Sequence record: PV611058.1
Direction: 5' to 3' (one strand)
Length of the DNA: 64,000 nt
Part shown: positions 25,006 to 54,072 of the stretch, piece after piece
How positions within the stretch are numbered: position 1 is the first letter of the stretch
How the letters are laid out: each line of letters opens with the position of its first letter
Notes under the pieces: generated by a model
The model's database searches: none
The model's input: only the letters and a program-made list of their open reading frames with translations
What the model was told of the DNA's origin: nothing
Program-made: the position numbers and the translations under genes

Positions 25006-25506
25006 TTAGGTCACAGCTTTGTATTTCTCCATTGCTTCGGTGATATTCAATACTGCTTGCGGTACGTCACTTTTGTTGTATGCAATGGTTAGTTTTTCCA
25101 TGTTATTGAGAAGACTTAGAAACAATGGAAGTACTTCTGCATTGTCACTGAAGTTACAATCATTGACAGTACTCAATTGAAATAACTCACCAGCATCAAC
25201 ATTGAGTGTGTTGTATTCTTTAACAATGTTTTCTTCAGTATTGAAGATGTAGAATACAGTCCCCATGTGGTGTAAGTATACACCAGTATCATTCTGAATA
25301 TGACATGGGGTGATTACAATTGCTGTGTTATCAATATTATTTACTATTGTCAAACGCAGACTATGTAACCCAAAGATTACAGTACAATCCTTTGTACTGT
25401 GTTGGATCTGGTCACTAGTAAAGGAAGACCCACTATGATTTTTAGATCCATTTAGTATTTCTTTGATAATTTTAAATGAATACTTCATCGAATTAGTTAA
25501 AAGCAT
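25006..25506 (-). CDS. family A paralog
   Basis: DAGELFQLSTV. Confidence 0.8.
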   Translation of the reverse strand: MLLTNSMKYSFKIIKEILNGSKNHSGSSFTSDQIQHSTKDCTVIFGLHSLRLTIVNNIDNTAIVITPCHIQNDTGVYLHHMGTVFYIFNTEENIVKEYNTLNVDAGELFQLSTVNDCNFSDNAEVLPLFLSLLNNMEKLTIAYNKSDVPQAVLNITEAMEKYKAVT

Positions 25507-25906
25507 GAACTTTACCTTTAAGTAAATTAATTAATGATCGCATAGATTCAGTACTGACAGTACCAAAATCAACACCTAAGCACTCGTATTGAAAGAACTC
25601 AATAGAATCAATTGAGTCCAAAGGAATCTCAACAACCTGATTCCCTATACCAGACATAGTAACATTGCTTTTATTAATCGTCAAGAAGTTTTTTGAATAA
25701 GTATTAAATTTTAGTGAAATCGCATCGGGGTGCTTTGTAACAATGCAGTACTGGGAGCCATACACATATAGTACTTTACTTTCACTAAGATCCGTTTTAA
25801 AAAAATGAATCCCATTGAAGTATTTCTCATTGGCTTCCATCGCCGCGATTAGTTCATCTGTTGTTGTTAACCTTGTTTCGTTCTTCGTTAAACTGTTGAA
25901 AAGCAT
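25493..25906 (-). CDS. family A paralog
   Basis: DSIEFFQYECL. Confidence 0.75.
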   Translation of the reverse strand: MLFNSLTKNETRLTTTDELIAAMEANEKYFNGIHFFKTDLSESKVLYVYGSQYCIVTKHPDAISLKFNTYSKNFLTINKSNVTMSGIGNQVVEIPLDSIDSIEFFQYECLGVDFGTVSTESMRSLINLLKGKVHAFN

Positions 25907-26327
25907 AGAATACTACCTTAACCATTTGTAGTGTTTCAGACATTACTTCTGATGAAAATTCAACATCATTGAATTTCAGCATAGTGTTCTGTGTAAAGAA
26001 AGTTGCTTCTAAGTCTTCCAGATTGAAGGGTTCATCAAACAAATTAGTACTGAACATGTCAGTCTTCTTCTTGTATGTGAACAAGAATTTGGAATTATAA
26101 CGAAGAACTATTTCATCTTTATTAACCAAAATACGTGCAATGTTCTGACGTGTCAATGTGGTAATGTTTAAATTGAACACGTTCTTGCGTGTTTCAGTGA
26201 TATCAACAAAATACCCATCTCCCTGATGGATATTACATCGTACATCCAACCCTTTCTGTACTGTATTGAACAGTGCATCTTGAATAAAATAATTTGCTGT
26301 ATCGATGTTTCCTAAAATGTCTAACAT
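25854..26327 (-). CDS. family A paralog (degenerate)
   Basis: DLEATFFTQNTM. Confidence 0.75.
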   Translation of the reverse strand: MLDILGNIDTANYFIQDALFNTVQKGLDVRCNIHQGDGYFVDITETRKNVFNLNITTLTRQNIARILVNKDEIVLRYNSKFLFTYKKKTDMFSTNLFDEPFNLEDLEATFFTQNTMLKFNDVEFSSEVMSETLQMVKVVFYAFQQFNEERNKVNNNR

Positions 26328-26839
26328 AACTTCTCCTTGATTGCTGTCATATTTAGAAGAAATTCTTCAAGCAATTCCTCTGTAACATACTCAACATACC
26401 AGAATATCACAATATCTTTTGAAAGTCGAGTATTCTTAAAAATATCTACTAACTCTTTGTAGTACTCAAGATCATATACATCTTTTATAATTAGTGAGTA
26501 CTGAAATAGTGATTCTTCAGTTAACTTAAATTCTGGATATAGTAAGTCATTAAATTCTAATGATTCTGATTGTACTTTTATTTTAGTGAAGTCATTTGTT
26601 AATCCACCATTACATCCATATAATGCAGCGTAATTCACGAACTTGGCTTTTGGATTAAAATCAAGAACAGTTTCACCATTATATGACAATCGGTGGAACG
26701 CCGTGAACTTTGTAATTTGCCACGGTTGCTTAATATCTAAGTCATTTATGTCTTTATTATTGTACATAAGAACAGTGAATATTTCAGCAATCTTCAATAA
26801 TAATTTAGTACGTGCTAGTACTGTCATAGGTTCAATCAT
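26321..26839 (-). CDS. family A paralog
   Basis: LTEESLFQYSLI. Confidence 0.8.
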   Translation of the reverse strand: MIEPMTVLARTKLLLKIAEIFTVLMYNNKDINDLDIKQPWQITKFTAFHRLSYNGETVLDFNPKAKFVNYAALYGCNGGLTNDFTKIKVQSESLEFNDLLYPEFKLTEESLFQYSLIIKDVYDLEYYKELVDIFKNTRLSKDIVIFWYVEYVTEELLEEFLLNMTAIKEKLC

Positions 26840-27252
26840 TATACACCTTCATATTCATCAAGGAAATCTTCGATGATCATTTCTGCGTCATCCATGTGCA
26901 TAGCATCAACTTCAACAATGCGAACCTTAGACGTATCCCAAATCATATAGCTAGGAACTGTATCTGGTTCGTAATCGTTTTTGTACTGAACTGCATCATA
27001 GCCGTTAATTTCGCAGTACTCAATCACTCCACGCCATTCGTCGTCACTGCCCATATCCGTCCACAGAAGCACGTTATCAACATCAACTTCTAAGGTATGT
27101 AAGTATACTGTATCAGCGTCAACAACGTTCAGTGGGCTTCTCAACTTGCGTAATGCAGCTTCTAAAGCACTGTGTTTACCTCCCATATGAAGGCCACCAT
27201 ACGGGATATAAAAGTTATCAATTTTTACAGTACTCGCATGATACAGTTTCAT
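26839..27252 (-). CDS. putative ADP-ribosyltransferase-fold protein
   Basis: KLYHAS, GLHMG, GYDAVQY.N, SY.IWD resemble small ART-like domains. Confidence 0.45.
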   Translation of the reverse strand: MKLYHASTVKIDNFYIPYGGLHMGGKHSALEAALRKLRSPLNVVDADTVYLHTLEVDVDNVLLWTDMGSDDEWRGVIEYCEINGYDAVQYKNDYEPDTVPSYMIWDTSKVRIVEVDAMHMDDAEMIIEDFLDEYEGV

Positions 27253-27261
27253 TATTCATTC

Positions 27262-27846
27262 CTATTTCAGTACTTTGACAAGGGCTTTAACCGCTGTTTC
27301 AAGTTGTGCAAAGTCGTTGATTGTAAGATAATGAATACCCAATGTACTCATTTCTGAATCTATTTTACTATACAAATCGAACATGTCAAGTAGATATTGA
27401 TATGTATATGACTCCGATGACACACATGATTCTTGAAATAGACGTTCTTCCATATCATTTACTACTTCATCATTTGCGTCTCGAATCACACCATCTTTGT
27501 ATGTGTAGTAAATCTCATCCCATTCATCTGATAAGCGGAATAGTAAAGGTTTACCATTAAACATCTCAAGGTCATATGCATTGACTTCACTCAATAACAT
27601 ATCATCAGGATCAGGTGTGAAATCGAATTGAGCGAGTGAAGAACCATCATAATCCTTAAGGAATACACCAATAGCATTCAATTTAACTTCGCCATAATTG
27701 CCATTCTTGAACTTTACACGAATATTAATATCAATGTTTTGAACAGTATCATCATCTTGGAATTGATAATCAATTTTATACTTTTCCCAAAGTTTTTTAA
27801 TATCTTTAAAGTACTTAATTTTACTTTCTATTTCTTTAAAGTTCAT
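27262..27846 (-). CDS. family A paralog
   Basis: MEERLFQESCV. Confidence 0.8.
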   Translation of the reverse strand: MNFKEIESKIKYFKDIKKLWEKYKIDYQFQDDDTVQNIDINIRVKFKNGNYGEVKLNAIGVFLKDYDGSSLAQFDFTPDPDDMLLSEVNAYDLEMFNGKPLLFRLSDEWDEIYYTYKDGVIRDANDEVVNDMEERLFQESCVSSESYTYQYLLDMFDLYSKIDSEMSTLGIHYLTINDFAQLETAVKALVKVLK

Positions 27847-28474
27847 CTGGAACCGCCATCTCTTGTATGTTCTTGCATTTTATCATTGCACAATTAGTAT
27901 GTAAAATGATAGCGTACTTGTGTAATGATTTAATTTTATAACACTCATTAAGTACTGAAATGATGCCCCATAACTCTTCTACATCAATAGTGATAGGTTC
28001 ACTAGTACTAAGTTGCATTAGTGCTGCTTCCACATCATCTTTGTTATTGATTTTGAACTGCATACCACGTTTCAGTATTTTGGTTTTTGGATTATACTCT
28101 GCCATTACATCACCTTCAGGGTAACCCTCGTGTAATAATAATGTAGTCTCATAACCTCCACAATTGAAATTAATTTCATCATAGTCAGGAACACAAATCA
28201 TTCCTTCACCATATTGATTATCTACTGATTCGATTGTTAAAATACGCTGATGTTCATTACTCAGGATAATAGAATCATGCCAGTACTGCGTAGTGAATTT
28301 ACTACGTTTCTTTTGACAGCACATACTTGACATGGGACCATACTTTTTATATAGGGACTTCTTGAATGCTATCGCATCAGGAGCCACCTTAATAACTTCT
28401 CGAATTAGGTCAATAGCTTCTTGATAACTTTTTCTCATTTGTCGTACCCATATAAAATATGATCTAAAGTGCAT
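27836..28474 (-). CDS. family A paralog (degenerate)
   Basis: VEAALMQLSTS. Confidence 0.75.
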   Translation of the reverse strand: MHFRSYFIWVRQMRKSYQEAIDLIREVIKVAPDAIAFKKSLYKKYGPMSSMCCQKKRSKFTTQYWHDSIILSNEHQRILTIESVDNQYGEGMICVPDYDEINFNCGGYETTLLLHEGYPEGDVMAEYNPKTKILKRGMQFKINNKDDVEAALMQLSTSEPITIDVEELWGIISVLNECYKIKSLHKYAIILHTNCAMIKCKNIQEMAVPDEL

Positions 28475-28997: not shown

Positions 28998-29579
28998 TTA
29001 ATCAAGCATAAGTGGCATCATCGCCCATATCTTTTTCATAATCATATCTTCAGTAAAAACAAACGTTTTAGGTGCAGTATATGATATTGACAACCCAAAT
29101 GGAAGTACGATTGCATCATCAATTATATTATGAATATCAAACCATGTTTTTACACAATCATATGGTGGAAGTTCATGTATTGTACTTAACTGAAAGTATT
29201 GTTCTTCACCAAATGTACTGCAATCAATATCACAAATTTTAGTGAATTGATGATTCCATTTAGATATAATACTGTTTTTATTATTGAACATATTAGTTCT
29301 ATGCATGAAACCATTTCTGCTAATATGATTTGATATTGCGTTTTCTTCAATATCATTGCTTATTTTAAAATTCATGTCAAAGTTGTAGTGCGAACTCGAC
29401 GATTCTTTGAATTTTAAATGAAAATAACGATTGTTATTAATTTCCATTTCAATACAAAACACATCTGAATCAAAACGATTAAACTTGTAATCGTTGTCTT
29501 CAGGTAGAGTCTGTAATTTTTTCATAACACCAAGCATAGGGTGCACTAAGCTTCTAATAAAATCATTAGTTATTTTCAT
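28998..29579 (-). CDS. family A paralog
   Basis: GEEQYFQLSTIH. Confidence 0.8.
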   Translation of the reverse strand: MKITNDFIRSLVHPMLGVMKKLQTLPEDNDYKFNRFDSDVFCIEMEINNNRYFHLKFKESSSSHYNFDMNFKISNDIEENAISNHISRNGFMHRTNMFNNKNSIISKWNHQFTKICDIDCSTFGEEQYFQLSTIHELPPYDCVKTWFDIHNIIDDAIVLPFGLSISYTAPKTFVFTEDMIMKKIWAMMPLMLD

Positions 29580-30072
29580 AGTATTCCTTTAGAACTTTAA
29601 ATGATTCAACAATACTATCTTGTGTGTAATTAGAACTATATACAATTGCATTTGATTTGATTGACCACAGATATGACATAAAGGTTATAACACTACTACA
29701 TGAACTTAATGTATTGTTTTGGAATTCATTTTCTTCAATGTTATCAGTACTGGTATTGATGAATTGGATAGTATCTTGTTTCTGATTAGACATTGAAACT
29801 AAAGTACAATCAGTATAAGGAGTGTACAAAAACGTCTCATTACTAATTGAACTATCATTAGTATATGATGGTTTGGTAATATAAATCAAACGCATGATAT
29901 CACGCTCAATACCCGATTTACGACTTTCCACTAAAGAAATCATATCTATATTTTTCATATGATCAACATTGACATGGAACTTTTTGTTTAGAATTACATC
30001 TTTTGGGGAATTTTTATATGAAGATAAGATCTCATACATCTCAACTAATTCTCGTGCATTTAATAAACTCAT
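29566..30072 (-). CDS. family A paralog
   Basis: IEENEFQNNTL. Confidence 0.75.
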   Translation of the reverse strand: MSLLNARELVEMYEILSSYKNSPKDVILNKKFHVNVDHMKNIDMISLVESRKSGIERDIMRLIYITKPSYTNDSSISNETFLYTPYTDCTLVSMSNQKQDTIQFINTSTDNIEENEFQNNTLSSCSSVITFMSYLWSIKSNAIVYSSNYTQDSIVESFKVLKEYYENN

Positions 30073-30497
30073 GTTTTGTCTCTTAATGAAAGAATATCCT
30101 TAGTATAAACTGATACAGAAATGTGATTGTATTTCATCATTAATTTATACACATAAGAAGCTAGTACTAAATCGTAAATTAATTTAGTATCATACAGTAC
30201 TCCGTATTGTAAAGCAAGTGAATCAATATCATCTTTACTTTCAATATCCAGAAATGTGCCGAAATATGTAGTACCGTGGAGATGAAAATTGGAATTAATG
30301 CAATCAATGCATTCATTGTCCAACAGAGTAGATGATGATGCCCTCGGTGAATCCCAAATAGTCACTGCGTGTATGCCCTCAACGAACAAATCTATCCATA
30401 TTTTGTGTCGTTGTCTTTTTTTTGTTTTATAATTTTCTGGATTTGAAAGTGTAGTTTCAATTATATCCCATATGTATAAGCATTCATCTCTTGTCAT
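30069..30497 (-). CDS. hypothetical protein (possible degenerate family A)
   Basis: DIDSLALQYGVLYD. Confidence 0.7.
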   Translation of the reverse strand: MTRDECLYIWDIIETTLSNPENYKTKKRQRHKIWIDLFVEGIHAVTIWDSPRASSSTLLDNECIDCINSNFHLHGTTYFGTFLDIESKDDIDSLALQYGVLYDTKLIYDLVLASYVYKLMMKYNHISVSVYTKDILSLRDKT

Positions 30498-31075: not shown

Positions 31076-31646
31076 ATGTATCCTTGATGTTTTTGATTGC
31101 CGTGTGTAGCTCTTTTAATGTATCGGATTCACAGTTAATGAACTTACTATACATTACCAATTCACCAGTGTCAATAGCTTTTGCAGTTTCATAGCAAAGC
31201 ATCATGTACTCAAACTCCTTGAAGTTGTCAAGTACTGATCTCTGGAAAATGTATGCTTCACGAATGTCTTCACTTTGATCTAGTTCTGGTGGAATTTCCA
31301 AATATGTATCATTCTCTACGTCATCAAAATTAGATTCAACAATTCGATTAATATCTTCGTGTAAAGCATTGACAAATATCATGTTTGGAGTAATGGAACC
31401 AATTCGCTCACTATGCCTTGATGTACGGATATACATTGCCATAGTATCCCATGAACCTTTTTTTGTCGTTCCATAATCGTAAACTTTATAAGACTCCAGT
31501 ACTACTGAACCAAAACGATATGGTGATTTGCATTCAACTTTAAGACGATAATTTCCAATAGGCTCATGTTCAGTAATGTTGTGCTTTTCAGATAGTTCTG
31601 CAATGTCATGCATCAATTTCATAATTTGAATGTGTTCAGCTTGCAT
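31062..31646 (-). CDS. family A paralog
   Basis: IREAYIFQRSVL. Confidence 0.8.
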   Translation of the reverse strand: MQAEHIQIMKLMHDIAELSEKHNITEHEPIGNYRLKVECKSPYRFGSVVLESYKVYDYGTTKKGSWDTMAMYIRTSRHSERIGSITPNMIFVNALHEDINRIVESNFDDVENDTYLEIPPELDQSEDIREAYIFQRSVLDNFKEFEYMMLCYETAKAIDTGELVMYSKFINCESDTLKELHTAIKNIKDTYERL

Positions 31647-32209
31647 TATAAGTCCTCTAATTTAACAGGTACATGTTCATTGATGAACGTCTTAAGAGCC
31701 AGTACTAGATCTTCTAATTCTTCTGTACTGAATTTTAATATAGTTTTAAAGATTATCAATTCATTTCTTTCTATAATCTTTGGAATTTCATATGCTAACA
31801 TAAGATTGCGAACAGTACCAGCGTTGTGTATGAGGTTCGCATTGAATAAAAGTACATCGTACTCGTCTTTTTTAATTTTATAATTGTACTCTTCAATTAC
31901 TTCATGTGTGTATGTATTCTTATAAGCAATTTTATTTTTATGAAATTTATAACCAACAGTAACACTATCATCATAAAATGTAGAACGATAATCTTGTTTT
32001 CTATCGCCGGACGAAATGATGTGTAATGCGGTGTATTTGTCCTCAACATCTAACTCAATGTTTGCATAACTGTTAACGGTTTCATTCTTTAGGACGTTAA
32101 TGTTATATTTCTCATTAACTTTAATGTACTGGCGTGAACCATTATCATCAATGAACTTAAAACAATGCTTTACCAACAATGTGATTTCTTTAATTAATTC
32201 AGTACTCAT
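31646..32209 (-). CDS. hypothetical protein (possible degenerate family A)
   Basis: EYDVLLFNANLIH. Confidence 0.75.
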   Translation of the reverse strand: MSTELIKEITLLVKHCFKFIDDNGSRQYIKVNEKYNINVLKNETVNSYANIELDVEDKYTALHIISSGDRKQDYRSTFYDDSVTVGYKFHKNKIAYKNTYTHEVIEEYNYKIKKDEYDVLLFNANLIHNAGTVRNLMLAYEIPKIIERNELIIFKTILKFSTEELEDLVLALKTFINEHVPVKLEDL

Positions 32210-32236: not shown

Positions 32237-32265
32237 ATTATAACACACCTGAATGCTCATGTAAA
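32237..32265 (-). promoter_or_regulatory. sigma70-like promoter
   Basis: TTTACA-17nt-TATAAT with TGn. Confidence 0.75.
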
Positions 32266-32274
32266 GCACTAAAC

Positions 32275-32298
32275 AAAAAAAGACCCATAAGGGTCTTT
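32275..32298 (-). terminator. intrinsic terminator
   Basis: AAAGACCC-TTAT-GGGTCTTT followed by T-run. Confidence 0.8.
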
Positions 32299-32881: not shown

Positions 32882-33365
32882 GAATATCTTTTAAACTAGG
32901 AATCTCATCCATAATCTCATCGATATCAGTTTCAATAGTAAAACCTGATTTATAATTTTGTAAGAGATAACTAAAAGCAACAAGATAAAGAATTTCATTT
33001 GGTTTATGAATTAACATGTGTTGGAACATAACTGATTCTAAATCAGATTCAGTACTAAGGTCAGCATAACATGTATCGTTGGTGTCAATTCGTACTTTAC
33101 TTGAATTTGGATTCCATGTAAAGCAATGTGTTCCAACTGTTCCCAAACATCCTACTCTTGTACTATCATTTGTTCCCAAAAAGATATCAAAATACGTTTC
33201 ATCTGTATAATCGTATTTTTGTACTTTACCTTTTTTAAGGCATAAATCATTATCCTTTCGAAAAGTTTTAGATGATAGTGTATCAATGATGCACATTAAT
33301 GTTTTTGCAAATGCAATACAATGACGTAATTCAAGTCTATGTAAATTATAATTAGTAAAATTCAT
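32808..33365 (-). CDS. family A paralog
   Basis: LESVMFQHMLIH. Confidence 0.8.
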   Translation of the reverse strand: MNFTNYNLHRLELRHCIAFAKTLMCIIDTLSSKTFRKDNDLCLKKGKVQKYDYTDETYFDIFLGTNDSTRVGCLGTVGTHCFTWNPNSSKVRIDTNDTCYADLSTESDLESVMFQHMLIHKPNEILYLVAFSYLLQNYKSGFTIETDIDEIMDEIPSLKDILEEKDFYQDFRDLYNMHRELSDNE

Positions 33366-33904
33366 AATTGTACCTTCAATATTTTATCAGCAATTGATAT
33401 AACCTTCTCATTGAATACATTACCAATCTCAATTCTTATATACATCGCAGGTGGAATCTTTCCCTGAAGTGCATAATATGTTTGTATACCTAAGTACTCA
33501 TTATTTGATAATGAAAATTTGATTCTCTCCATATCTATGTCTGATGTTGGTAAATCTAGTAGTTCATGGTTGTAGTCAACATTTTCAGTGTATATCTGTT
33601 CGACGTAATTTGAATGATCACTACTAATGTAGATACTATCATCACGAATAATTACTTTATAATCAGAAGGTTCAAACTTATCTTTAGGAGAAAAGAAGAC
33701 ATCATCTATCTTCTCTTCTCGTATACCGAATAACAATTTACCATCGTACTTTACATCAAGCATATTACCTAGAATAGTAATTACACAATGTTCATCAATG
33801 TCATGACGTAATGAACGAGTCTTGTATTTTGGGTTAATGAAAATTTTCATTAATTTTATACAAATGTCGGCAATGCATTTTACATTATCATTTTCTATGT
33901 ACAT
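33362..33904 (-). CDS. hypothetical protein (possible degenerate family A)
   Basis: 180 aa within array; DMERIKFSL. Confidence 0.75.
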   Translation of the reverse strand: MYIENDNVKCIADICIKLMKIFINPKYKTRSLRHDIDEHCVITILGNMLDVKYDGKLLFGIREEKIDDVFFSPKDKFEPSDYKVIIRDDSIYISSDHSNYVEQIYTENVDYNHELLDLPTSDIDMERIKFSLSNNEYLGIQTYYALQGKIPPAMYIRIEIGNVFNEKVISIADKILKVQL

Positions 33905-34783: not shown

Positions 34784-35129
34784 AATTTACCTCGTATGTG
34801 TTATAATTCCACGTTTTAACACTATCCATTTGTATATCCTGAACTTCATGGAAATATTTAAGTACCTTCTGGTATTCCATTAGTTCGTACACATCTTCAG
34901 TATTGACAGTGCTCTCCTGAAACAATTCCTCTTCTGATAAAGTACTATAATCAGGGATTTTTATTTCAGAATATATCTCATTCATATATGAATCATTTTG
35001 GTAAATCTGTAGATAAAACTGATTATATTCAGGGATATAGGTTACGAAATGGTTCTTGATGAATTCATATCTTGAAGCAAAGCAATCATTGCCATCCGTC
35101 ATGTACTGAATTGTTGTTGTATTATGCAT
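34767..35129 (-). CDS. family A paralog
   Basis: LSEEELFQESTV. Confidence 0.8.
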   Translation of the reverse strand: MHNTTTIQYMTDGNDCFASRYEFIKNHFVTYIPEYNQFYLQIYQNDSYMNEIYSEIKIPDYSTLSEEELFQESTVNTEDVYELMEYQKVLKYFHEVQDIQMDSVKTWNYNTYEVNYVRND

Positions 35130-35604
35130 TCAAATAATCCACGCATTTATGGTATACATCTAAATCTAAAAAGAATCGTTGTTTGTATTTGTAATGATGA
35201 AGTAGTGCACCATAAAGTAATATAGCATTAAGTACTTTTGCATCATGAATACAAGACCCTTGGAAGTACATTTCTTCTGTCATGAAAACTAACTCATTGT
35301 ACGGGATAAGCACTGAATCTCTAAATGTATCAATGTTAATCTTCAAATCGGACCCTTGGCAATATGAAATATATTCACCTCGGTAATGAAAGTCATTATC
35401 GTCAAAGTACTCAGCATATACTTGATTGTTCCTATTATTTTTAAAGGCAAGTCTTCCTTTGGTTGAACTGAATTGGTCATATTGGAACATTCCACCAAAA
35501 GGCATTCCACCGAAAGGTTGGGGACTTCTGAACTCCTTTGCAATGCGATGAATGTTAGATGCAAATTCTAAAACACCATCGTAATCATATTCTGTTGTAA
35601 TCAT
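35122..35604 (-). CDS. family A paralog
   Basis: MTEEMYFQGSCIH. Confidence 0.8.
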   Translation of the reverse strand: MITTEYDYDGVLEFASNIHRIAKEFRSPQPFGGMPFGGMFQYDQFSSTKGRLAFKNNRNNQVYAEYFDDNDFHYRGEYISYCQGSDLKINIDTFRDSVLIPYNELVFMTEEMYFQGSCIHDAKVLNAILLYGALLHHYKYKQRFFLDLDVYHKCVDYLNA

Positions 35605-36113: not shown

Positions 36114-36143
36114 ATTATATCACAAAGATTTGGAGGGTGTCAA
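36114..36143 (-). promoter_or_regulatory. sigma70-like promoter
   Basis: TTGACA-18nt-TATAAT with TGn. Confidence 0.75.
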
Positions 36144-36730
36144 GAGTTCTCACGAAGTTCTACCATTTCTTTCCATACTAAATGGTAATCTTCTAAGTCC
36201 AGATAGAAGTCTTCATTTAAGTGCTCATATAAGTACTTGTACATGAATAGTACACCTAAATTGTATTCAGTATTAAGCAATGATTGTTGGAAGTAGTTTT
36301 CTTCATTTAGTTCTATATCCATGAACTCAAATCTACCTAGACCTTTTAATGTACGTATCTCAACATGTGAAGTATCTGTTTTACTGAAGCACATGAATCC
36401 ACCTCTAAATTCGGGATCATATTCACATTCATACTGTCCACTGTTATTATAGAAATCTCTATTACCATCCTTATCTTTTGGCTTAACAACTGATACGTGA
36501 AGGTCGTCATCTTTGTACATTGTACGTTCTGGCGTTTTCACACATTTTAACTTATTTTCTTTAATGTACTTGATAATATCAATTATATCTTGTGCAGTAC
36601 TGATTGCTGCCTCGAACGTATCCAACTTAAGATGATTGTATAGAGTTCCCTCGTTCTTTATTTTATCTAACATACTAACCTCATAGTTCATACATCTTTG
36701 ATTTGAATTGCATTGGTCCACCAACTTCAC
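36140..36730 (-). CDS. family A paralog
   Basis: LNEENYFQQSLL; true start probably MLDKIK. Confidence 0.8.
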   Translation of the reverse strand: MKLVDQCNSNQRCMNYEVSMLDKIKNEGTLYNHLKLDTFEAAISTAQDIIDIIKYIKENKLKCVKTPERTMYKDDDLHVSVVKPKDKDGNRDFYNNSGQYECEYDPEFRGGFMCFSKTDTSHVEIRTLKGLGRFEFMDIELNEENYFQQSLLNTEYNLGVLFMYKYLYEHLNEDFYLDLEDYHLVWKEMVELRENS

Positions 36731-37019
36731 ATGGATAATTTTCCATAATACGATTCAAAAGTATCTGGTACTGTTGTAGTACTTCAATTTCCAAATGTAT
36801 ACTACTATCCAGTACTAATGACTCCTGGAACAATTCACCTGTATCTAAACATGAAAAATCATTTATAGTTAGCATTGGCTTATCATTGGTACGCAATGTA
36901 AATGATTCCTCATTTCGGATTAATGTACAGAATTCATTATGTTTTCTGTTATAATTCATTTTAACCAATAATAACTTAGTGTGAGTTGCGTACATTATTT
37001 TTACTAATTCAGTCTTCAT
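36681..37019 (-). CDS. family A paralog
   Basis: DTGELFQESLV. Confidence 0.8.
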   Translation of the reverse strand: MKTELVKIMYATHTKLLLVKMNYNRKHNEFCTLIRNEESFTLRTNDKPMLTINDFSCLDTGELFQESLVLDSSIHLEIEVLQQYQILLNRIMENYPCEVGGPMQFKSKMYEL

Positions 37020-41514: not shown

Positions 41515-41955
41515 CTAATCCCCTGTACTTAAATATTCACATGCTCCCCAGTCAAGGAAGAAGGGTTCAAAATTCAATTCCTTAAAGTACCACAAAACAA
41601 CCAAGGAATCAAGCATTTCTTGGTTAAAAATAAGACTCTGTTGGAAGTAATACTCTTCAGTACCCCACGGCCCATCAAGTACCCCGAAGTCAACAGGTGT
41701 ATTTGATGTGTCAAAAGTAATCTTAGTACCTGGAATATATACAAAGAAACTAGTATATTGACTACATGAAGAGTACTGTATAGTATTGTCTTTATCATGG
41801 CCCATAAGTAAAATATCATCAGAGTATGTCTTTATACCTGATAGATAATACTCATTACCAAATGCACTTACTTTATCACCATAGAAACCACTTTTTATGT
41901 TATCGTGGAAGTGATGTATTTTGTGTGCCAGTTTAAGTGCACTTGCTAAACTCAT
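41515..41955 (-). CDS. family A paralog (GPW subfamily)
   Basis: GPWGTEEYYFQQSLIF. Confidence 0.85.
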   Translation of the reverse strand: MSLASALKLAHKIHHFHDNIKSGFYGDKVSAFGNEYYLSGIKTYSDDILLMGHDKDNTIQYSSCSQYTSFFVYIPGTKITFDTSNTPVDFGVLDGPWGTEEYYFQQSLIFNQEMLDSLVVLWYFKELNFEPFFLDWGACEYLSTGD

Positions 41956-43022: not shown

Positions 43023-43317
43023 ATCTCTTCATTTCATTTTGTATAAAAATCATATCTTCTATTGTACATGAGTACTTATTCTTGTCAAACACCAAAGAAG
43101 CTTGAAATAGTTCAACATCATCCAGTACTGTATAATCTGTAATACTTTCAGAGTTATAGTCGAAGTCATCATGCAATACATCAATGAAATTAAAACACAA
43201 ATCCGAGTACTGAATATATAAACTCAACTCATGTTCCGAATCACCCTTGACAAGATTACAGCACAAATCCCACCCCGTTCTGGACTTACAAACGTACATT
43301 GAATAATCATATGTCAT
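42952..43317 (-). CDS. family A paralog (CNL.KGD subfamily)
   Basis: DDVELFQASLVFDK. Confidence 0.8.
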   Translation of the reverse strand: MTYDYSMYVCKSRTGWDLCCNLVKGDSEHELSLYIQYSDLCFNFIDVLHDDFDYNSESITDYTVLDDVELFQASLVFDKNKYSCTIEDMIFIQNEMKRYVKENTFDTSTPTTSNYYFNTGE

Positions 43318-43673
43318 TCTGGTATTCCTATATTGAATTTGTATTCTTGATTAATACTGACATTGCCTTTATTCAAAGAGTCATACTCTTTCATTTCATT
43401 TTGTATTGCAATAACTTCTTCAAATGTACACAAGTACTTCTTATCAAATACTAATGACTCCTGAAATAGTTCAGCGGCATCCATTACTGTATAATCCGGC
43501 ATATCCTGATGTGGATACTGTAATGAATTGTAATCAATGAATGTAAATTTACCCTGAGTGAAATGAATATACTCATTTGCACTGTGCATCAAATCACCTT
43601 TGTTTAAATTACAAAAGTACTGATAACTGTGCTTGAAAGTATGTACTGATATTAAAAAATCAAATTCCATCAC
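43314..43673 (-). CDS. family A paralog (CNL.KGD subfamily)
   Basis: DAAELFQESLVFDKKY. Confidence 0.8.
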   Translation of the reverse strand: MMEFDFLISVHTFKHSYQYFCNLNKGDLMHSANEYIHFTQGKFTFIDYNSLQYPHQDMPDYTVMDAAELFQESLVFDKKYLCTFEEVIAIQNEMKEYDSLNKGNVSINQEYKFNIGIPE

Positions 43674-44095
43674 TCTTCTCCTAGATTAAAAAATTTCCAG
43701 AAATCAACTTCACCAGTACTGCACCAGATATCTATACATTCCTTGTGAATACATTTAATTCTATGCTGGATTTCAACCATCTCTTCTAATGTACAGATGT
43801 ACTTCTTATCAAATACTAATGCCTCCTGAAACAGTGCAGCATCATCAAGTACTGTATAGTCCTGCATCTCGATAGATATCCCATGAAACCCAGTACTAAA
43901 ATCCATCAAATAAAAGTCAGCATTCCAGTACTTTAAAATCTTGTCCCTGGCGTAGTTTAAATCACCCTTGTATAAGTTACAATGCGTAACTAACTCACCA
44001 GTGTACATGAATGTCCTTGCACAAAATTCATTATATTTTATTTGCATCTTCATTTCAATCGTAATCTCTACTATAATTAATAAGGTAAACGCCAA
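43670..44095 (-). CDS. family A paralog (CNL.KGD subfamily)
   Basis: DDAALFQEALVFDKKY; true start probably internal (MKMQIK). Confidence 0.8.
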   Translation of the reverse strand: MAFTLLIIVEITIEMKMQIKYNEFCARTFMYTGELVTHCNLYKGDLNYARDKILKYWNADFYLMDFSTGFHGISIEMQDYTVLDDAALFQEALVFDKKYICTLEEMVEIQHRIKCIHKECIDIWCSTGEVDFWKFFNLGEE

Positions 44096-44835: not shown

Positions 44836-45462
44836 TTAGCACCCTTTAACAACTTTTGAAATGTAATCTTCTAATGCACCAATGTTCTTTGTATTCGTTC
44901 GAACTAAAAGATAACTTAAATTCTCGAACTCCTGAACATAATGCTTAACAGCGTACATGCATCGTAATTCAAAATCTGTATGAACCGTTTTGTACTGAAA
45001 TAACATCTCTTCTGAAGCATCTAAAAGCTCTGTAGCTTGTTCTGTACTGAACTTAAAGGGATTCTGTACTCCTGAACTAAAACACTTTTGTTCGTTCGTC
45101 TGGACACCCTGTGATAGATATAATCCTGTGCTACCATCTTGTGTTGATATCGAATTGAAACCATTACTTGCAACCATTAAATCTGAACTCAATACAAATA
45201 ATAATTTATCTTCCTTATGAATTAATAAATCTGACTTCAGGGATTTTATTCCTGTACTGGTTATATCACCTATACTAAGATTGTCACTGAACTTCTCAGC
45301 GTTGTTCGCAATGCTCTGGACAAGATTTTTTAATCTCTTAATGGCACTTCTGTCTTTTTCTAATGTATCTAATAAACTCATTGAACTCATTGTACTTTCC
45401 TTACATATTTGTACCGAACAAAACGGAACTTTGAATGCCATTAATCGACACTTCATGTACAT
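44836..45462 (-). CDS. family A paralog
   Basis: ASEEMLFQYKTVH; true start probably MSSMSL. Confidence 0.8.
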   Translation of the reverse strand: MYMKCRLMAFKVPFCSVQICKESTMSSMSLLDTLEKDRSAIKRLKNLVQSIANNAEKFSDNLSIGDITSTGIKSLKSDLLIHKEDKLLFVLSSDLMVASNGFNSISTQDGSTGLYLSQGVQTNEQKCFSSGVQNPFKFSTEQATELLDASEEMLFQYKTVHTDFELRCMYAVKHYVQEFENLSYLLVRTNTKNIGALEDYISKVVKGC

Positions 45463-45745
45463 ATATATTTTGTCTGAATACCTGAAGCAATTGAACTAAA
45501 CTCTGTTGCATAATAATATGCATCGCTAAATTATCAAAGGCCGTTTCGTGTTGGAATCGTGCAGCTTCATCTTCTATGAAATTCGGAACTTGGACTGGAT
45601 TCTCAAAATTTGTCCTTGTACTGAACTGTACATCATTGTCCTGTACCTTAATACCATATGAATTATCATTGTTATCAACTACATCAAATTCAATTAAACT
45701 ACCATCTTTACTGACGTTTACTATATAAACTGAAAATCTACTCAT
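45401..45745 (-). CDS. family A paralog
   Basis: EDEAARFQHETAFD. Confidence 0.8.
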   Translation of the reverse strand: MSRFSVYIVNVSKDGSLIEFDVVDNNDNSYGIKVQDNDVQFSTRTNFENPVQVPNFIEDEAARFQHETAFDNLAMHIIMQQSLVQLLQVFRQNIYVHEVSINGIQSSVLFGTNM

Positions 45746-46273: not shown

Positions 46274-46468
46274 TTATCTTGTGTTAAAATATTCACTGAA
46301 ATGATTATAACACAAAAGCACCACGATGTTAAGCACTCTGTTGTCAAAATCATCTTGTGATGTAGGATGCAAGGACGCATTGATGTTAAAATTCACTATA
46401 TCATTGTGGAATTGGTATGTGAACAAATCAAACTTCGTATGCCTTTGTTTGATATCATAGGCGGTCAT
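46274..46468 (-). CDS. hypothetical protein
   Basis: 64 aa starting right after upstream stop. Confidence 0.5.
   Translation of the reverse strand: MTAYDIKQRHTKFDLFTYQFHNDIVNFNINASLHPTSQDDFDNRVLNIVVLLCYNHFSEYFNTR
46304..46332 (-). promoter_or_regulatory. sigma70-like promoter
   Basis: TTAACA-17nt-TATAAT with TGn. Confidence 0.7.
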
Positions 46469-46469
46469 A

Positions 46470-47078
46470 TTATATATTCAACCCTTTAACAATGGAAATA
46501 AATTCTTTGTAAACATTTTCAGGTAAAGCTCTACTACCATAAAGAACACTAAATTCAGGTAACATATCCGAAATCTCTTTCGCTAAATTTATTTCATCCC
46601 TGAACATTTGCACAGGCATGATATCCTGTACCAATGATAACTGAAAGAAAAATGATTCAATATCTTCATGAACCTCTGAATTTAAATAAATCTCTTCTGG
46701 AAACTGGGCTGTACTGTAATAATAAAATACATCAATTCTTTTTTCATTATTTTGTACAAGAGGTAAATTTCTTTCGTCTCTCTTATTAATATTTGTTTTC
46801 CATGACTCAATGTTATTCGGAACCCAAAACTCATAAGGTGTCTTCTCTCCTGAAATATTATCCAGCTTCAATCCATAATATTCACTTTCGCCGTACTTTT
46901 GCTTCAAAACAATACCTGTACTACTGATGTTTACAATGTACGTATCAACAATCCCTTCTGTGGTAAAAGGAATATTTAACTCTGAACCTTCAGGGTACTT
47001 AGCATTGAATGAATCTAATGCTTTACTTAGCACTGGGATTGCACTTGTACTGTACTTCATTAATTGATCTATGTTCAT
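46470..47078 (-). CDS. family A paralog
   Basis: IESFFFQLSLVQD. Confidence 0.8.
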   Translation of the reverse strand: MNIDQLMKYSTSAIPVLSKALDSFNAKYPEGSELNIPFTTEGIVDTYIVNISSTGIVLKQKYGESEYYGLKLDNISGEKTPYEFWVPNNIESWKTNINKRDERNLPLVQNNEKRIDVFYYYSTAQFPEEIYLNSEVHEDIESFFFQLSLVQDIMPVQMFRDEINLAKEISDMLPEFSVLYGSRALPENVYKEFISIVKGLNI

Positions 47079-47650: not shown

Positions 47651-47677
47651 AGGTATCTCCTTAAAAAATGATTACAC

Positions 47678-47706
47678 ATTGTACCATGCATTTGTACTTG
47701 TGTCAA
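47678..47706 (-). promoter_or_regulatory. sigma70-like promoter
   Basis: TTGACA-17nt-TACAAT with TGn. Confidence 0.75.
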
Positions 47707-47708
47707 AC

Positions 47709-47739
47709 AAAAAAAGCCCATATCTTACGATACAGGCAT
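47709..47739 (-). terminator. intrinsic terminator
   Basis: GCCTGTATC-GTAA-GATATGGGC followed by T-run. Confidence 0.8.
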
Positions 47740-50248: not shown

Positions 50249-50254
50249 ATATTA

Positions 50255-50885: not shown

Positions 50886-50896
50886 ATTGGTATTCC

Positions 50897-51846: not shown

Positions 51847-51874
51847 TTATATTGCATCTCCTTTAGGTATATTC

Positions 51875-52186: not shown

Positions 52187-52195
52187 ATTCTTCTC

Positions 52196-52793: not shown

Positions 52794-52822
52794 ACTATAT
52801 CAGTAATGAAAAGTACTGTCAA
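52794..52822 (-). promoter_or_regulatory. sigma70-like promoter
   Basis: TTGACA-17nt-TATAGT with TGn; AGTACT overlaps the -35. Confidence 0.75.
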
Positions 52823-52823
52823 G

Positions 52824-53198
52824 CTAGTATTGCACTGTTCTAATGAAAGTACCTTTACTCATGGATTTAAGCTTATGAACCTCTTCCTGTATACCCTTGA
52901 TTAACCCTAAAGGTATAGGTAAATCATGTACTAAGCTGTACTGAAAGTATTCTTCTTCAGATAAAGTACTAACATCTGGAATGCCAATTTTAGTTAGATA
53001 ATCTTGATGTGTTGACCAATAAATTATATCTTCAGTACTATTGTACTCCCCATATACTGAACAATATTGATGAATATCTTTCCTGTACCCTTGAGCAATA
53101 AAGAACTTATCTACTGCATTACCAGCATTAATAGAATTCACTTCGATTGTCACAGTACTTGAGCTTGTTTTTCCTTTACTATGCATATTAATCCCCAA
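52824..53198 (-). CDS. family A paralog
   Basis: LSEEEYFQYSLVHD. Confidence 0.85.
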   Translation of the reverse strand: MGINMHSKGKTSSSTVTIEVNSINAGNAVDKFFIAQGYRKDIHQYCSVYGEYNSTEDIIYWSTHQDYLTKIGIPDVSTLSEEEYFQYSLVHDLPIPLGLIKGIQEEVHKLKSMSKGTFIRTVQY

Positions 53199-53374
53199 AT
53201 TAGATATCGAACACTATCAGCTTGATAGTTAGTTCCTACTGTGTGTTTTAATATTAACTCATCTTTCAGTACTGAACATTCTGCATTAGATATAGGAAGA
53301 GAATTAATTCTTTGAATTTCTGGTCGCAAAATACCGCGAAGCTTGCGGTAATCTTCGTATGATAATATTTTCAT
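53150..53374 (-). CDS. family B outlier
   Basis: MKILSYEDY...VGTNYQA. Confidence 0.8.
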   Translation of the reverse strand: MKILSYEDYRKLRGILRPEIQRINSLPISNAECSVLKDELILKHTVGTNYQADSVRYLIWGLICIVKEKQAQVL

Positions 53375-53377
53375 TGT

Positions 53378-53719
53378 TCAGTACTCAACGATGTGTTCTT
53401 CATAACCATTAAACTCCGGTTTAGTTTCTTTCATTAGGACTACCATTTTATGTACTAATGGCATAGGAAATTCTAAATCCCATACTAATGATTCTTGAAA
53501 GTATTCTTCTTCAGATAAAGTACTTAAATCTTTAATATCAACGTGCTTGTATATTTTCTTTTCGTAATTAAGAAATGATATATATAAATCATTAACATAA
53601 GAATCATAAGTAATTGTGAATGGCTTACCCTTGTAGTCCATTACATCTTTACATAGACTGCATTTGATATATGTATGTTCTTCTGAACTGTATACATTGA
53701 GTTGTATATTAGTTTTCAT
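53378..53719 (-). CDS. family A paralog (recent duplicate)
   Basis: LSEEEYFQESLVWD; C-half nearly identical to 53734-54072. Confidence 0.9.
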   Translation of the reverse strand: MKTNIQLNVYSSEEHTYIKCSLCKDVMDYKGKPFTITYDSYVNDLYISFLNYEKKIYKHVDIKDLSTLSEEEYFQESLVWDLEFPMPLVHKMVVLMKETKPEFNGYEEHIVEY

Positions 53720-53733
53720 AGTTACCTTATATA

Positions 53734-54072
53734 TTAATACTCAACGATGTGTTCTTCATAACCATTAAACTCCGGTTTAGTTTCTTTCATTAGTACTATC
53801 ATCTTATGTACTAATGGCATAGGAAACTCCAAATCCCATACTAATGATTCTTGAAAGTATTCCTCTTCAGATAAAGTACTTAAATCTTCAATGTCAATGT
53901 GTTCGTATATGTTATATTTGTAATCAGCAAAAGATATATAAAAACCTCTTGTATTATCATAAGTAAGTGCAAATGGCTTACCTTTGTAGTCCATTACAGA
54001 GTTACATGTATGGCATTTGATGTATGTACTTGCAAATGATTTATATACCTTGAGTTTTATATTAGTTTTCAT
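53734..54072 (-). CDS. family A paralog (recent duplicate)
   Basis: LSEEEYFQESLVWD. Confidence 0.9.
   Translation of the reverse strand: MKTNIKLKVYKSFASTYIKCHTCNSVMDYKGKPFALTYDNTRGFYISFADYKYNIYEHIDIEDLSTLSEEEYFQESLVWDLEFPMPLVHKMIVLMKETKPEFNGYEEHIVEY

What the first reader, a model, noticed from the sequence alone, without database searches (positions are those of the whole stretch)
25006..54072. ~29 kb array of ~50 divergent proteins sharing one short acidic EE-x-FQ-x-S-(L/T)-(I/V) module (family A)
Seen: by manual count, 48 ORFs in this interval carry a clear motif, e.g. LSEEELFQESTV, LTEESLFQYSLI, SEEQHFQLSTIH, WDSEEYYFQNSTLY, LSEEEYFQESLVWD. About 6 more carry degenerate versions. The motif sits in the middle to C-terminal part and is followed by a helical stretch. 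The N-terminal 60-130 aa look unrelated between subfamilies. Genes are packed with overlapping stops/starts, and sigma70-type promoters subdivide the array. Inference: a variable-domain plus constant-module design, i.e. a library of effectors or adaptors that all dock on one common partner (host protein, phage scaffold or packaging/localisation signal) while each variable part recognises a different target such as defence systems. I know of no described function for such a family.
Basis: partly seen in the sequence, partly recalled or inferred. Interest (0 to 1): 0.92.

Follow-up and report, generated by a model that had tools for sequence, protein, structure and literature searches.

The report
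Fifty-copy early protein family, jumbo coliphage
A 29-kb stretch of a giant E. coli phage (Asteriusvirus) holds about fifty tandemly duplicated, very divergent copies of one small acidic protein. The family has no known function or fold and probably belongs to the phage's early, host-directed gene set. The copies look like an ordinary but very large paralogue family, not a short docking tag on unrelated domains.

Summary
The window matches Escherichia phage WPEC3 at 100% over the 10 kb compared (window 34000-44000). This is an Asteriusvirus, one of the Rak2-like jumbo phages.

- **Count:** In 25006-54072, all on the minus strand, an iterated HMM finds 46 members at 27-79 bits. Shuffled proteins reach at most 12.4 bits. 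About 8 degenerate copies and one outlier at 13235-13924 come on top. F and Q of the motif are invariant in 182 family proteins.
- **Shape of the shared part:** It is not a short module. It is the core of a roughly 100-residue alpha/beta domain. Two AlphaFold models of members with unrelated N-terminal sequences show the same order of elements. They also hit the same predicted structures of Rak2-like phage proteins over their full length. No solved structure matches.
- **Context:** The genes lie just inside the terminal repeat and are read away from it. Ten strong sigma-70-type promoters, all on the coding strand, lie in the array; six of them sit just upstream of gene starts. The phAPEC6 equivalents (gp404c-gp466c) are absent from the published virion proteome. 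Purifying selection holds (dN/dS about 0.25-0.31).
- **Assembly gap:** It lies between genes.

Most likely this is a tandemly amplified early family of host-directed binders, and the motif is a fold determinant. The function is inferred, not shown.

The parts
13235..13924 (-). family A member outside the array (229 aa)
   Evidence: HMM 38.7 bits
25006..25506 (-). family A member
   Evidence: 36.3 bits
26321..26839 (-). family A member
   Evidence: 34.1 bits
27262..27846 (-). family A member
   Evidence: 42.4 bits
28435..28986 (-). family A member
   Evidence: 32.2 bits
28998..29579 (-). family A member; AlphaFold model 2
   Evidence: 55.7 bits; pLDDT 80.7, pTM 0.79
29566..30072 (-). family A member (weakest)
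   Evidence: 26.8 bits
30497..31075 (-). family A member
   Evidence: 49.3 bits
31062..31646 (-). family A member
   Evidence: 32.6 bits
32297..32881 (-). family A member (annotated start 32815 in WPEC3)
   Evidence: 53.8 bits
32808..33365 (-). family A member
   Evidence: 43.3 bits
33888..34382 (-). family A member
   Evidence: 50.8 bits
34370..34783 (-). family A member
   Evidence: 40.2 bits
34767..35129 (-). family A member, short form
   Evidence: 50.9 bits; phrog_13866
35122..35604 (-). family A member
   Evidence: 63.3 bits
35601..36080 (-). family A member
   Evidence: 61.4 bits
36140..36730 (-). family A member (annotated start 36673)
   Evidence: 55.8 bits; phrog_28549 and phrog_12674
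36681..37019 (-). family A member, short form
   Evidence: 33.8 bits
37009..37368 (-). family A member, short form
   Evidence: 55.2 bits
37967..38563 (-). family A member (annotated start 38521)
   Evidence: 44.1 bits
38876..39409 (-). family A member
   Evidence: 40.8 bits
39406..39852 (-). family A member
   Evidence: 56.7 bits
39849..40292 (-). family A member; no reciprocal-best ortholog found in the phAPEC6 stretch compared
   Evidence: 45.5 bits
40292..40606 (-). family A member, short form
   Evidence: 30.8 bits
40603..41046 (-). family A member
   Evidence: 72.5 bits
41021..41512 (-). family A member; AlphaFold model 1
   Evidence: 79.2 bits; pLDDT 78.5, pTM 0.76
41515..41955 (-). family A member
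   Evidence: 56.1 bits
41952..42422 (-). family A member
   Evidence: 60.4 bits
42606..43022 (-). family A member
   Evidence: 55.9 bits
42952..43317 (-). family A member, not annotated in the WPEC3 record
   Evidence: 49.5 bits; absent from the table
43314..43673 (-). family A member, short form
   Evidence: 57.4 bits
43670..44095 (-). family A member (annotated start 44008); first gene downstream of the assembly gap
   Evidence: 52.4 bits
44145..44221 (.). assembly gap (N), between genes; poly-G run on its upstream edge on the coding strand
   Evidence: letters not looked up
44836..45462 (-). family A member (annotated start 45390)
   Evidence: 54.5 bits
45742..46380 (-). family A member (annotated start 46260)
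   Evidence: 46.0 bits; phrog_28680 covers residues 41-212
46470..47078 (-). family A member
   Evidence: 34.3 bits
47075..47650 (-). family A member
   Evidence: 57.5 bits
47725..48222 (-). family A member
   Evidence: 54.8 bits
48529..49122 (-). family A member
   Evidence: 56.6 bits
49103..49444 (-). family A member, short form
   Evidence: 41.3 bits
49441..49752 (-). family A member, short form
   Evidence: 41.3 bits
49742..50248 (-). family A member
   Evidence: 67.0 bits
50325..50885 (-). family A member
   Evidence: 58.7 bits
51875..52186 (-). family A member, short form
   Evidence: 51.4 bits
52196..52546 (-). family A member, short form
   Evidence: 46.2 bits
52824..53198 (-). family A member, short form
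   Evidence: 54.0 bits
53378..53719 (-). family A member, short form
   Evidence: 46.8 bits
53734..54072 (-). family A member, short form; 76% identical to 53378-53719
   Evidence: 53.3 bits
25493..25906 (-). candidate degenerate member (..SIEFFQYECLG..)
   Evidence: by eye; HMM and hhalign not significant
25854..26327 (-). candidate degenerate member (..ATFFTQNTML..)
   Evidence: by eye
27836..28474 (-). candidate degenerate member (..AALMQLSTS..)
   Evidence: by eye
30069..30497 (-). candidate degenerate member (..LALQYGVLYD..)
   Evidence: by eye
31646..32209 (-). candidate degenerate member; BLAST-related to member 31062-31646
33362..33904 (-). candidate degenerate member (weak)
   Evidence: by eye
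37374..37976 (-). candidate degenerate member (weak)
   Evidence: by eye
45401..45745 (-). candidate degenerate member (..EDEAARFQHETAFD..)
   Evidence: by eye
32237..32298 (-). terminator-like hairpin (32298-32279), then sigma-70-type promoter TTTACA-17-TATAAT with TG
36114..36143 (-). sigma-70-type promoter, 12 of 12 matches with TG, in the gap upstream of 35601-36080
44030..44058 (-). sigma-70-type promoter, 11 of 12, upstream of annotated start 44008
46304..46332 (-). sigma-70-type promoter, 11 of 12 with TG, upstream of annotated start 46260
47678..47737 (-). terminator-like hairpin (47737-47716), then promoter TTGACA-17-TACAAT with TG
52794..52822 (-). sigma-70-type promoter TTGACA-17-TATAGT with TG, in the gap upstream of 52519-52764

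Best explanation
Family A is a tandemly amplified, old and fast-diverging paralogue family of small, acidic proteins that were not found in the virion of a related phage. It occupies the host-promoter-driven region just inside the terminal repeat of an Asteriusvirus jumbo coliphage.

All members share one alpha/beta domain of about 100 residues. About two thirds also carry an N-terminal helix plus beta-hairpin of about 60 residues, which belongs to the same predicted fold. The conserved [ST]-E-E-x-[YLF]-F-Q-x-S-[LT]-[VI] stretch is a short helix in the centre of that fold. I read it as a helix N-cap followed by core residues, that is, a fold determinant and not a detachable docking peptide.

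The most likely function is inferred from position, promoters, absence from the virion and the pattern of evolution. It rests on analogy with early accessory genes of T4-type phages and with multigene families of large eukaryotic viruses. On this reading the family is a diversified set of early host-directed binders for take-over or counter-defence. Each paralogue would use its variable surface on a different host target.

Shown: family membership, domain extent, genomic position, absence of the phAPEC6 equivalents from its virion proteome, purifying selection, tandem duplication. Inferred: early expression, the structural role of the motif, host-directed function.
For: **Family and domain.**
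- 46 + 1 members score 27-79 bits; shuffled proteins reach at most 12.4 bits.
- F and Q are invariant in the 47-, 150- and 182-sequence alignments.
- The domain envelope covers nearly all of the 103-124-residue members.

**Fold.**
- Two AlphaFold models (pLDDT 78.5 and 80.7; pTM 0.76 and 0.79) have the same order of secondary-structure elements, although their N-terminal parts share no detectable sequence similarity.
- Both hit the same BFVD models of RaK2, GAP32, fHe-Yen9, Serratia BF and Erwinia phage proteins. Model 2 does so over nearly its full length.
- N-terminal extensions cluster at 55-65 residues in 110 of 182 family proteins.

**Position and expression signals.**
- The array begins next to the terminal-repeat boundary and is read away from it.
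- All 14 strongest sigma-70-type sites in 25-64 kb lie on the coding strand, several in the intergenic gaps.
- The CBB paper regards the region that holds two of its homologs, CBB_468 and CBB_469, as early and host-take-over.

**Not in the virion.** No protein between gp348 and gp548 is in the phAPEC6 virion proteome. The array there is gp404c-gp466c.

**Evolution.**
- dN/dS against phAPEC6 is 0.25 for the domain and 0.31 for the N-terminal part.
- dS per gene ranges from 0.06 to 2.6, and some genes have no reciprocal-best ortholog in the phAPEC6 stretch compared.
- The closest paralogue lies within two genes for 20 of 46 members; permuted order gives a mean of 4.0.
- The family is expanded in related genera: phAPEC6 54 matches, RaK2 38, Munch 24, GAP32 7, fHe-Yen9-04 7.
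Against: - No expression data. The one raw RNA-seq run offered held no phage reads, so early timing rests on promoter consensus and position only.
- No partner, target or phenotype is known for any member.
- A glutamine that is invariant across about 12% mean identity is unusual for a purely structural residue. It may mark a shared functional site.
- The invariance is partly circular, because copies that lost FQ fall below the HMM threshold.
- Both structures are predictions. Part of the N-terminal region of model 1 is low-confidence (residues 45-60), as is the stretch just before the motif in model 2 (residues about 81-120).
- Gene-wide dN/dS shows no positive selection. An arms-race family might show it, although site-level tests were not run.
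Confidence: 0.5

Rival explanations
1. The conserved E-E-x-x-F-Q-x-S-L-V surface binds one shared hub, either a host protein or a phage machine. The rest of each paralogue recognises a different target, so the array is an adaptor or effector library. One concrete sub-case, from my own recall and untested: Q-x-S-L-[VI]-[YWF] resembles the bacterial sliding-clamp-binding pentapeptide QL[SD]LF.
For: F and Q are invariant, and E, E and S are conserved at 77-84%, in 182 proteins whose mean identity is otherwise about 10%. That is stronger than expected for fold maintenance alone. The variable remainder and the large copy number fit a library. The members are acidic.
Against: The motif lies inside a confidently modelled helix in the middle of the domain (block pLDDT 79-97), not in a tail or a loop. 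The conserved region extends over about 100 residues. The whole-protein fold is shared. No partner has been identified. The clamp-motif likeness differs at position 2 and sits in structured sequence.
Confidence: 0.2
2. The family is an enzyme family. The E-E, Q and S residues would form a conserved active or ligand-binding site, for example modifying a host macromolecule or sequestering a small signalling molecule. The paralogues would then differ in substrate.
For: The invariant and conserved residues are polar or acidic and clustered within 8 residues.
Against: There is no similarity to any Pfam family, PDB sequence or solved fold. That includes known phage nucleotide sponges and ADP-ribosyltransferases. 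About fifty paralogous enzymes of about 110 residues would be unprecedented. The [ST]-E-E pattern is explained more simply as a helix cap.
Confidence: 0.07
3. The members assemble with themselves or with each other through the conserved core. They would form a homo- or hetero-oligomeric intracellular structure or a combinatorial set of complexes.
For: Many co-expressed paralogues share one conserved surface, and the genes are packed into operons.
Against: No evidence either way. The one homodimer prediction gave no verdict. None of the phAPEC6 equivalents is in its virion proteome.
Confidence: 0.08
4. The array is largely dispensable duplicated DNA, a genomic accordion left over from past selection. 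Most copies would have no present function.
For: Some copies have degenerate motifs. Some members lack a reciprocal-best ortholog in phAPEC6. Divergence is very high.
Against: All 46 frames are open. Pooled dN/dS is 0.25-0.31 over 6,265 codons. Order and content are largely syntenic with phAPEC6. The family is kept in several genera.
Confidence: 0.05

Closest known systems
PHROGs of unknown function: phrog_13866, 9317, 12674, 28680, 28549, 34636, 30978, 19795, 32531 and others
   Same: The window's members match these profiles, several over their full length. They are the same proteins of Rak2-like jumbo phages.
   Different: PHROGs split the family into at least nine groups among the ten members scanned, with no function and no link between most of them. 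The unifying 100-residue domain with invariant F-Q is not recorded there or in Pfam.
Paralogous genes noted in the genome papers of RaK2 (PMC3622015: nearly 10% of gene products are paralogues) and CBB (PMC5259590: 22 paralogous ORFs; region with RpoD-like promoters suspected to be early and host-take-over)
   Same: Same phage clade and the same kind of region. The CBB homologs CBB_468 and CBB_469 lie in that suspected early region.
   Different: Those papers give neither a family definition, motif, copy number or structure, nor any function.
Lineage-specific expansions in other large viruses, for example the roughly 35-copy zinc ribbon of Bacillus phage G (PMC7824862). From my own knowledge: the multigene families near the genome ends of African swine fever virus and poxviruses, and the non-essential immediate-early genes of phage T4.
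   Same: Tandem arrays of small divergent paralogues lie near a genome end or in the early region. Content varies between close relatives. A host-interaction role is presumed.
   Different: There is no sequence or fold relationship. This is an analogy of organisation only. The copy number here (46-62 in one phage genome) is larger than the phage G case cited.
Bacterial sliding-clamp-binding motif QL[SD]LF and the TEV protease site E-x-x-Y-x-Q-(S/G); both likenesses are recalled from memory
   Same: Both are superficial string likenesses: Q-x-S-L-[VI]-[YWF], and E-E-x-Y-F-Q-x-S.
   Different: The motif here is in a structured helix inside a domain. The spacing to S differs from the TEV site (Q-x-S, not Q-S). 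Neither was tested functionally.

Membership tests
Family A itself (as defined here) | Significant match to the roughly 100-residue domain HMM, well above shuffled controls | tested here: met
   47 window ORFs score 26.8-79.2 bits; shuffled proteins reach 8.7-12.4 bits
Family A itself (as defined here) | Invariant F-Q within [ST]-E-E-x-x-F-Q-x-S-[LT]-[VIL] | tested here: met
   F and Q are at 100%, E/E at 79/77% and S at 84% in 182 proteins. About 8 neighbouring ORFs have lost it.
Family A itself (as defined here) | One shared fold across subfamilies | tested here: met
   Two models have the same order of elements and share BFVD hits. These are predictions only.
Any Pfam family or solved fold | Match above the curated cut-off, or a structural match with Z of 8 or more or Foldseek E of 0.001 or less | tested here: not met
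   Pfam: no hit above cut-off for 47 members. PDB profile search: 0 hits. Foldseek against PDB: best E 1.7. VIA wide: best Z 2.6 and 4.3. Atlas: TM at most 0.31.
Virion or internal-head proteins | Detected in the purified-virion proteome | tested here: not met
   The phAPEC6 virion list has nothing between gp348 and gp548. The array is gp404c-gp466c.
Early (host RNA polymerase-dependent) genes | Sigma-70-type promoters upstream, on the coding strand | tested here: met
   The 10 sites with at least 11 of 12 matches in the interval are all on the minus strand. Six lie just upstream of gene starts.
Early (host RNA polymerase-dependent) genes | Transcripts present in the first minutes of infection | tested here: inconclusive
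   The only raw RNA run offered (X23) held 0 reads of the phage. The other runs are contigs and probably DNA.
Short linear docking motif (clamp-binding type) | Motif in a disordered tail or loop, able to function as an isolated peptide | tested here: not met
   The motif lies in a helix within blocks of pLDDT 79-97, in the middle of the domain. This rests on predictions only.
Short linear docking motif (clamp-binding type) | Binding to the hub protein | not tested

The most novel reading that the evidence does not exclude
The invariant F-Q with its acidic cap is an exposed common interface. Through it, some fifty to sixty paralogues all engage one hub, such as a polymerase clamp, RNA polymerase, a protease or a phage machine. 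Each paralogue would bring a different variable surface. The array would then be a phage-encoded adaptor library on a new fold, the largest paralogue family I know of in a cultured phage.
Probability: 0.15. Interest if true: 0.85.

Novelty: new member of a known kind. Interest (0 to 1): 0.5.

Why it matters
Jumbo phages carry hundreds of genes of unknown function. Here about 8% of one genome (46-62 of 756 annotated genes) reduces to a single domain family, with a simple diagnostic motif and confident models. A 29-kb block of "hypothetical proteins" becomes one testable object.

The same family is expanded in at least four related genera that infect Escherichia, Klebsiella, Salmonella, Cronobacter, Pectobacterium and Yersinia. 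If the members are host-directed, they form a ready panel of about fifty natural variants of one scaffold for finding host targets or defence systems. Mutating the invariant F-Q pair would test in one step whether the motif is structural or a docking site. These phages are also being proposed for therapy, so it is useful to know what a tenth of their genes do.

Tried and rejected
**Similarity searches that found nothing.**
- Pfam scans of 10 and then all 47 members gave only sub-threshold noise.
- A profile search of PDB sequences found nothing.
- Foldseek against PDB, VIA-align against 48,161 chains (two models) and the ESM Atlas shape search gave no credible match.
- The ESM Atlas feature search gave no usable hit.

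**Tests that gave no answer.**
- RNA evidence: run X23 held no reads on 46300-52290, and the other runs are contigs and probably DNA. Nothing can be said on expression.
- A homodimer prediction for 41024-41512 gave no verdict. It is not evidence either way.

**Relationships looked for and not found.**
- hhalign of the 30 non-member ORFs of 60 residues or more in 20-54 kb against the family profile gave nothing significant. The 8 degenerate copies rest on inspection only.
- Family B (54062-60471) shows no relation to family A or to its N-terminal extension by hhalign.
- Pseudomonas phage PA5oct, which has published temporal RNA-seq, has no family member. Its data cannot be transferred.
- One hit of the large profile search (P0009, 773 aa, 14 stretches) is a spurious tandem-repeat ORF.

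**Ideas considered and dropped.**
- A protease-site reading, because the spacing differs from the TEV-type site.
- A virion or packaging signal, because the proteins are not in the phAPEC6 virion.

- No whole genome is held for the window. The identical GenBank record was searched instead.
- The letters of the assembly gap were not looked up.

Full report
**What the window is.** Window 34000-44000 is 100% identical to Escherichia phage WPEC3 (PV611058), 98.8% to fEgEco12 and about 83% to phage 121Q. These are all Asteriusvirus, jumbo myoviruses of the Rak2-like group. Every gene of the region is on the minus strand. Every annotated product in the 25-64 kb part is "hypothetical protein".

- The strict pattern [FYW]Q.S[LTSIVAC][ILVMFY] occurs in 35 of the 69 minus-strand ORFs of 25006-54072. 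It occurs in none of the 91 other minus-strand ORFs. Shuffling the 69 proteins gives a mean of 0.45 and a maximum of 3.
- An HMM built on the motif region and iterated three times recovers 46 ORFs in the interval, plus one at 13235-13924, at 26.8-79.2 bits. Twenty shuffles of every ORF never exceed 12.4 bits.
- Eight further ORFs of similar size inside the array carry recognisably decayed versions. They do not reach significance by HMM or hhalign.
- Members are acidic, with median pI 4.9 against 5.75 for the other ORFs. They are packed with -1 and -4 overlaps.

**The assembly gap.** N fills 44145-44221. On the coding strand the order is as follows:
- the stop of ORF 44258-44482;
- a short spacer that ends in a poly-G run;
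- the gap;
- about 90 bases that hold a sigma-70-type site (44058-44030);
- the family A gene 43670-44008/44095.

No family A frame crosses the gap. The + strand ORF 44141-44515 in the mechanical list merely reads through N. Continuity cannot be judged from the window. I did not look the letters up in other copies.

**What is shared.**
- It is not a 12-residue module. The domain envelopes are about 100 residues long and always reach the C-terminus. In the 103-124-residue members they cover nearly the whole protein.
- F and Q are invariant in alignments of 47, 150 and 182 family proteins. Otherwise only the two preceding E (79% and 77%), the S two places after Q (84%) and a few hydrophobic positions are conserved. 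Mean column identity is 8-12%.
- The invariance is partly circular, since copies that lost F-Q drop below the threshold.

**Is the N-terminus an unrelated variable domain?**
- At the sequence level it mostly looks unrelated. BLAST links only three small groups. Iterated profile searches link 9 of the window's long members and leave the others as singletons or pairs.
- Its length is regular: 55-65 residues in most of the 110 long family proteins.
- PHROG 12674 aligns over nearly the full length of two long members of different subfamilies.
- Two AlphaFold models were made. One is of 41024-41512 (163 aa, pLDDT 78.5, pTM 0.76). The other is of 29001-29579 (193 aa, pLDDT 80.7, pTM 0.79), whose N-terminal part shares no detectable sequence similarity with the first. 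Both show the same succession: a long N-terminal helix, a beta meander, a short helix that carries E-E-x-x-F-Q, a long helix, a strand and a C-terminal helix.
- Searched against predicted viral structures, both hit the same uncharacterised proteins of RaK2, GAP32, fHe-Yen9-03/04, Serratia phage BF and Erwinia phage pEa_SNUABM_47. Model 2 aligns over about 190-220 columns with TM up to 0.76 at 12-15% identity.
- So the long members share one whole-protein architecture, and the short members are its C-terminal two thirds.

**Relation to known folds and families.** None was found.
- Pfam gives only sub-threshold noise.
- The profile search of PDB sequences finds nothing.
- Foldseek against PDB has a best E of 1.7.
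- An exhaustive alignment to 48,161 solved chains gives a best Z of 2.6 and 4.3, below the usual background of 7-8.
- The ESM Atlas gives TM of at most 0.31.
- PHROGs hold the members in at least nine separate groups among the ten scanned, all of unknown function.

**Distribution.**
- A profile search of 1.84 billion representative proteins finds 136 clusters at E of 0.001 or less. All are 55-229 residues long and nearly all carry the motif. One false hit is a tandem-repeat ORF.
- Named members are hypothetical proteins of Asteriusvirus or RaK2-type phages, or sit on contigs of about 350 kb in E. coli assemblies.
- Six-frame searches count 62 matches in WPEC3. Of these, 46 are in the array, one is at window 13235, and about 15 weak ones are in a second region outside the window. 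The same search counts 54 in phAPEC6, 38 in RaK2, 24 in Salmonella phage Munch, 7 in GAP32 and 7 in fHe-Yen9-04. A search with the broader full-length profile counts 5 in CBB and none in Pseudomonas phage PA5oct.
- The family therefore predates these genera and is expanded in several of them.

**Genomic setting.**
- Window 60600-63900 occurs at both ends of the WPEC3 record and inside the 20,993-bp direct terminal repeat of fEgEco12. Window 57000-60300 maps once, just inside that repeat.
- Going inward from the repeat, one meets first a 31-member array of small helical proteins (family B, 60471 down to 54062). Family A follows (54072 down to 25006). Both are read away from the repeat.
- Weak promoter-like sites are no more frequent than in shuffles. 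However, all 14 sites with at least 11 of 12 consensus matches in 25-64 kb lie on the coding strand. Ten of these are inside the array. Six of those ten sit in the few intergenic gaps or just before annotated starts, and two directly follow terminator-like hairpins.
- The CBB genome paper regards the corresponding promoter-rich region as early and host-take-over. Two of the CBB homologs, CBB_468 and CBB_469, lie in it.
- In phAPEC6 the array is gp404c-gp466c. The published virion proteome lists nothing between gp348 and gp548.

**Evolution.**
- Against phAPEC6 the array is syntenic. Orthologue identity ranges from 41 to 95%, and seven members have no reciprocal-best ortholog in the phAPEC6 stretch compared.
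- Pooled dN/dS is 0.25 for the domain, 0.31 for the N-terminal part and 0.22 for non-family ORFs nearby. These are coding genes under purifying selection, and the N-terminus is only slightly freer.
- dS per gene varies from 0.06 to 2.6 between neighbours, which points to allelic mosaicism by recombination.
- The closest paralogue lies within two positions for 20 of 46 members, against a permuted mean of 4.0 and maximum of 14. All strongly similar pairs are adjacent, which is the signature of tandem duplication. Most copies are old, at 30% identity or less.

**How it most likely works.**
- Shown: one domain family, tandemly amplified, conserved in frame, next to the terminal repeat, behind host-type promoters. 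Its phAPEC6 equivalents were not found in the virion.
- Inferred: the proteins are made early by host RNA polymerase and act in the cytoplasm on host components. The variable surfaces give different specificities.
- I read the motif as the structural heart of the fold. [ST]-E-E is a typical helix N-cap followed by acidic first-turn residues. F, L/T and V/I have the spacing of a buried face. The stretch is the best-predicted part of model 1.
- The invariant Q is the one feature that this reading does not explain well.
- Enzyme, self-assembly and junk readings are less likely, for the reasons given under rivals.

**Literature.**
- The RaK2 paper states that nearly 10% of its gene products are paralogues.
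- The CBB paper lists 22 paralogous ORFs.
- A comparative review of 224 jumbo phages mentions 121Q only for its fibres. Its text search turned up a 35-copy zinc ribbon in phage G but no expansion in this group.
- Papers on fEgEco12, JP4, Sharanji and phAPEC6 call these genes hypothetical.
- Within the library searched, nobody has defined this family, its motif, its size or its fold.

**Verdict.** It is a new and unusually large instance of a known kind of thing, of moderate interest.

Noticed in passing
window 54062-60471, plus 38511-38702, 51595-51846 and 53150-53374: A second multigene family (family B). It has 31 paralogues of 63-94 aa, looks helical from sequence, and carries a conserved L-G-T-(N/D)-Y-Q-E motif. 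It lies between the terminal repeat and array A, with three copies interspersed in array A. It shows no detectable relation to family A. Pooled dN/dS against phAPEC6 is 0.39.
   Followed up: partly
window about 60500-60600 (boundary); 60600-64000: This is the inner edge of the direct terminal repeat. Window 60600-63900 is present at both ends of the WPEC3 record and inside the fEgEco12 repeat, while 57000-60300 is single-copy. The repeat part holds several perfect or near-perfect sigma-70-type promoters (61904, 62352, 63880), followed by GC-rich hairpins.
   Followed up: partly
window 42952-43317: This is a clear family A gene (49.5 bits, ATGA overlap with the upstream gene). It is not annotated in GenBank record PV611058, which lists only a 41-codon ORF at 43059-43184 there.
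   Followed up: yes
L010 (PV611058 83000-107000) and record positions 45-106 kb, outside the window: About 15 weaker matches to the family A profile (E from 4e-8 to 9e-3) lie in a second block of hypothetical genes mixed with tRNA genes. The superfamily may therefore exceed 60 copies per genome.
   Followed up: partly
window 60600-63900: Megablast finds matches in 81 phage records, including Campylobacter, Klebsiella and Shigella phages at 80-90% identity. This is far wider than for the arrays (34-36 records). Which element is shared was not determined.
   Followed up: no
window 25006-54072 against L002 (phAPEC6): Synonymous divergence differs up to 40-fold between neighbouring orthologue pairs (dS 0.06 to 2.6). 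This suggests that alleles of individual genes are exchanged between phage lineages.
   Followed up: partly
window 16531-17934: A small four-member paralogue group of 89-103 aa: 16531-16815, 16778-17089, 17100-17411 and 17665-17934.
   Followed up: no
window 44222-44240: A run of about ten G on the coding strand directly borders the assembly gap, and a CCCCGCCG stretch lies on its far side. A GC-rich hairpin or homopolymer may be why the assembly broke there.
   Followed up: no
proteins P0026, P0145-P0157: Many copies of these phage proteins are filed under Escherichia coli in public assemblies, on contigs of 320-354 kb. Whole Asteriusvirus genomes therefore sit in bacterial genome records, through carrier state or contamination.
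   Followed up: no
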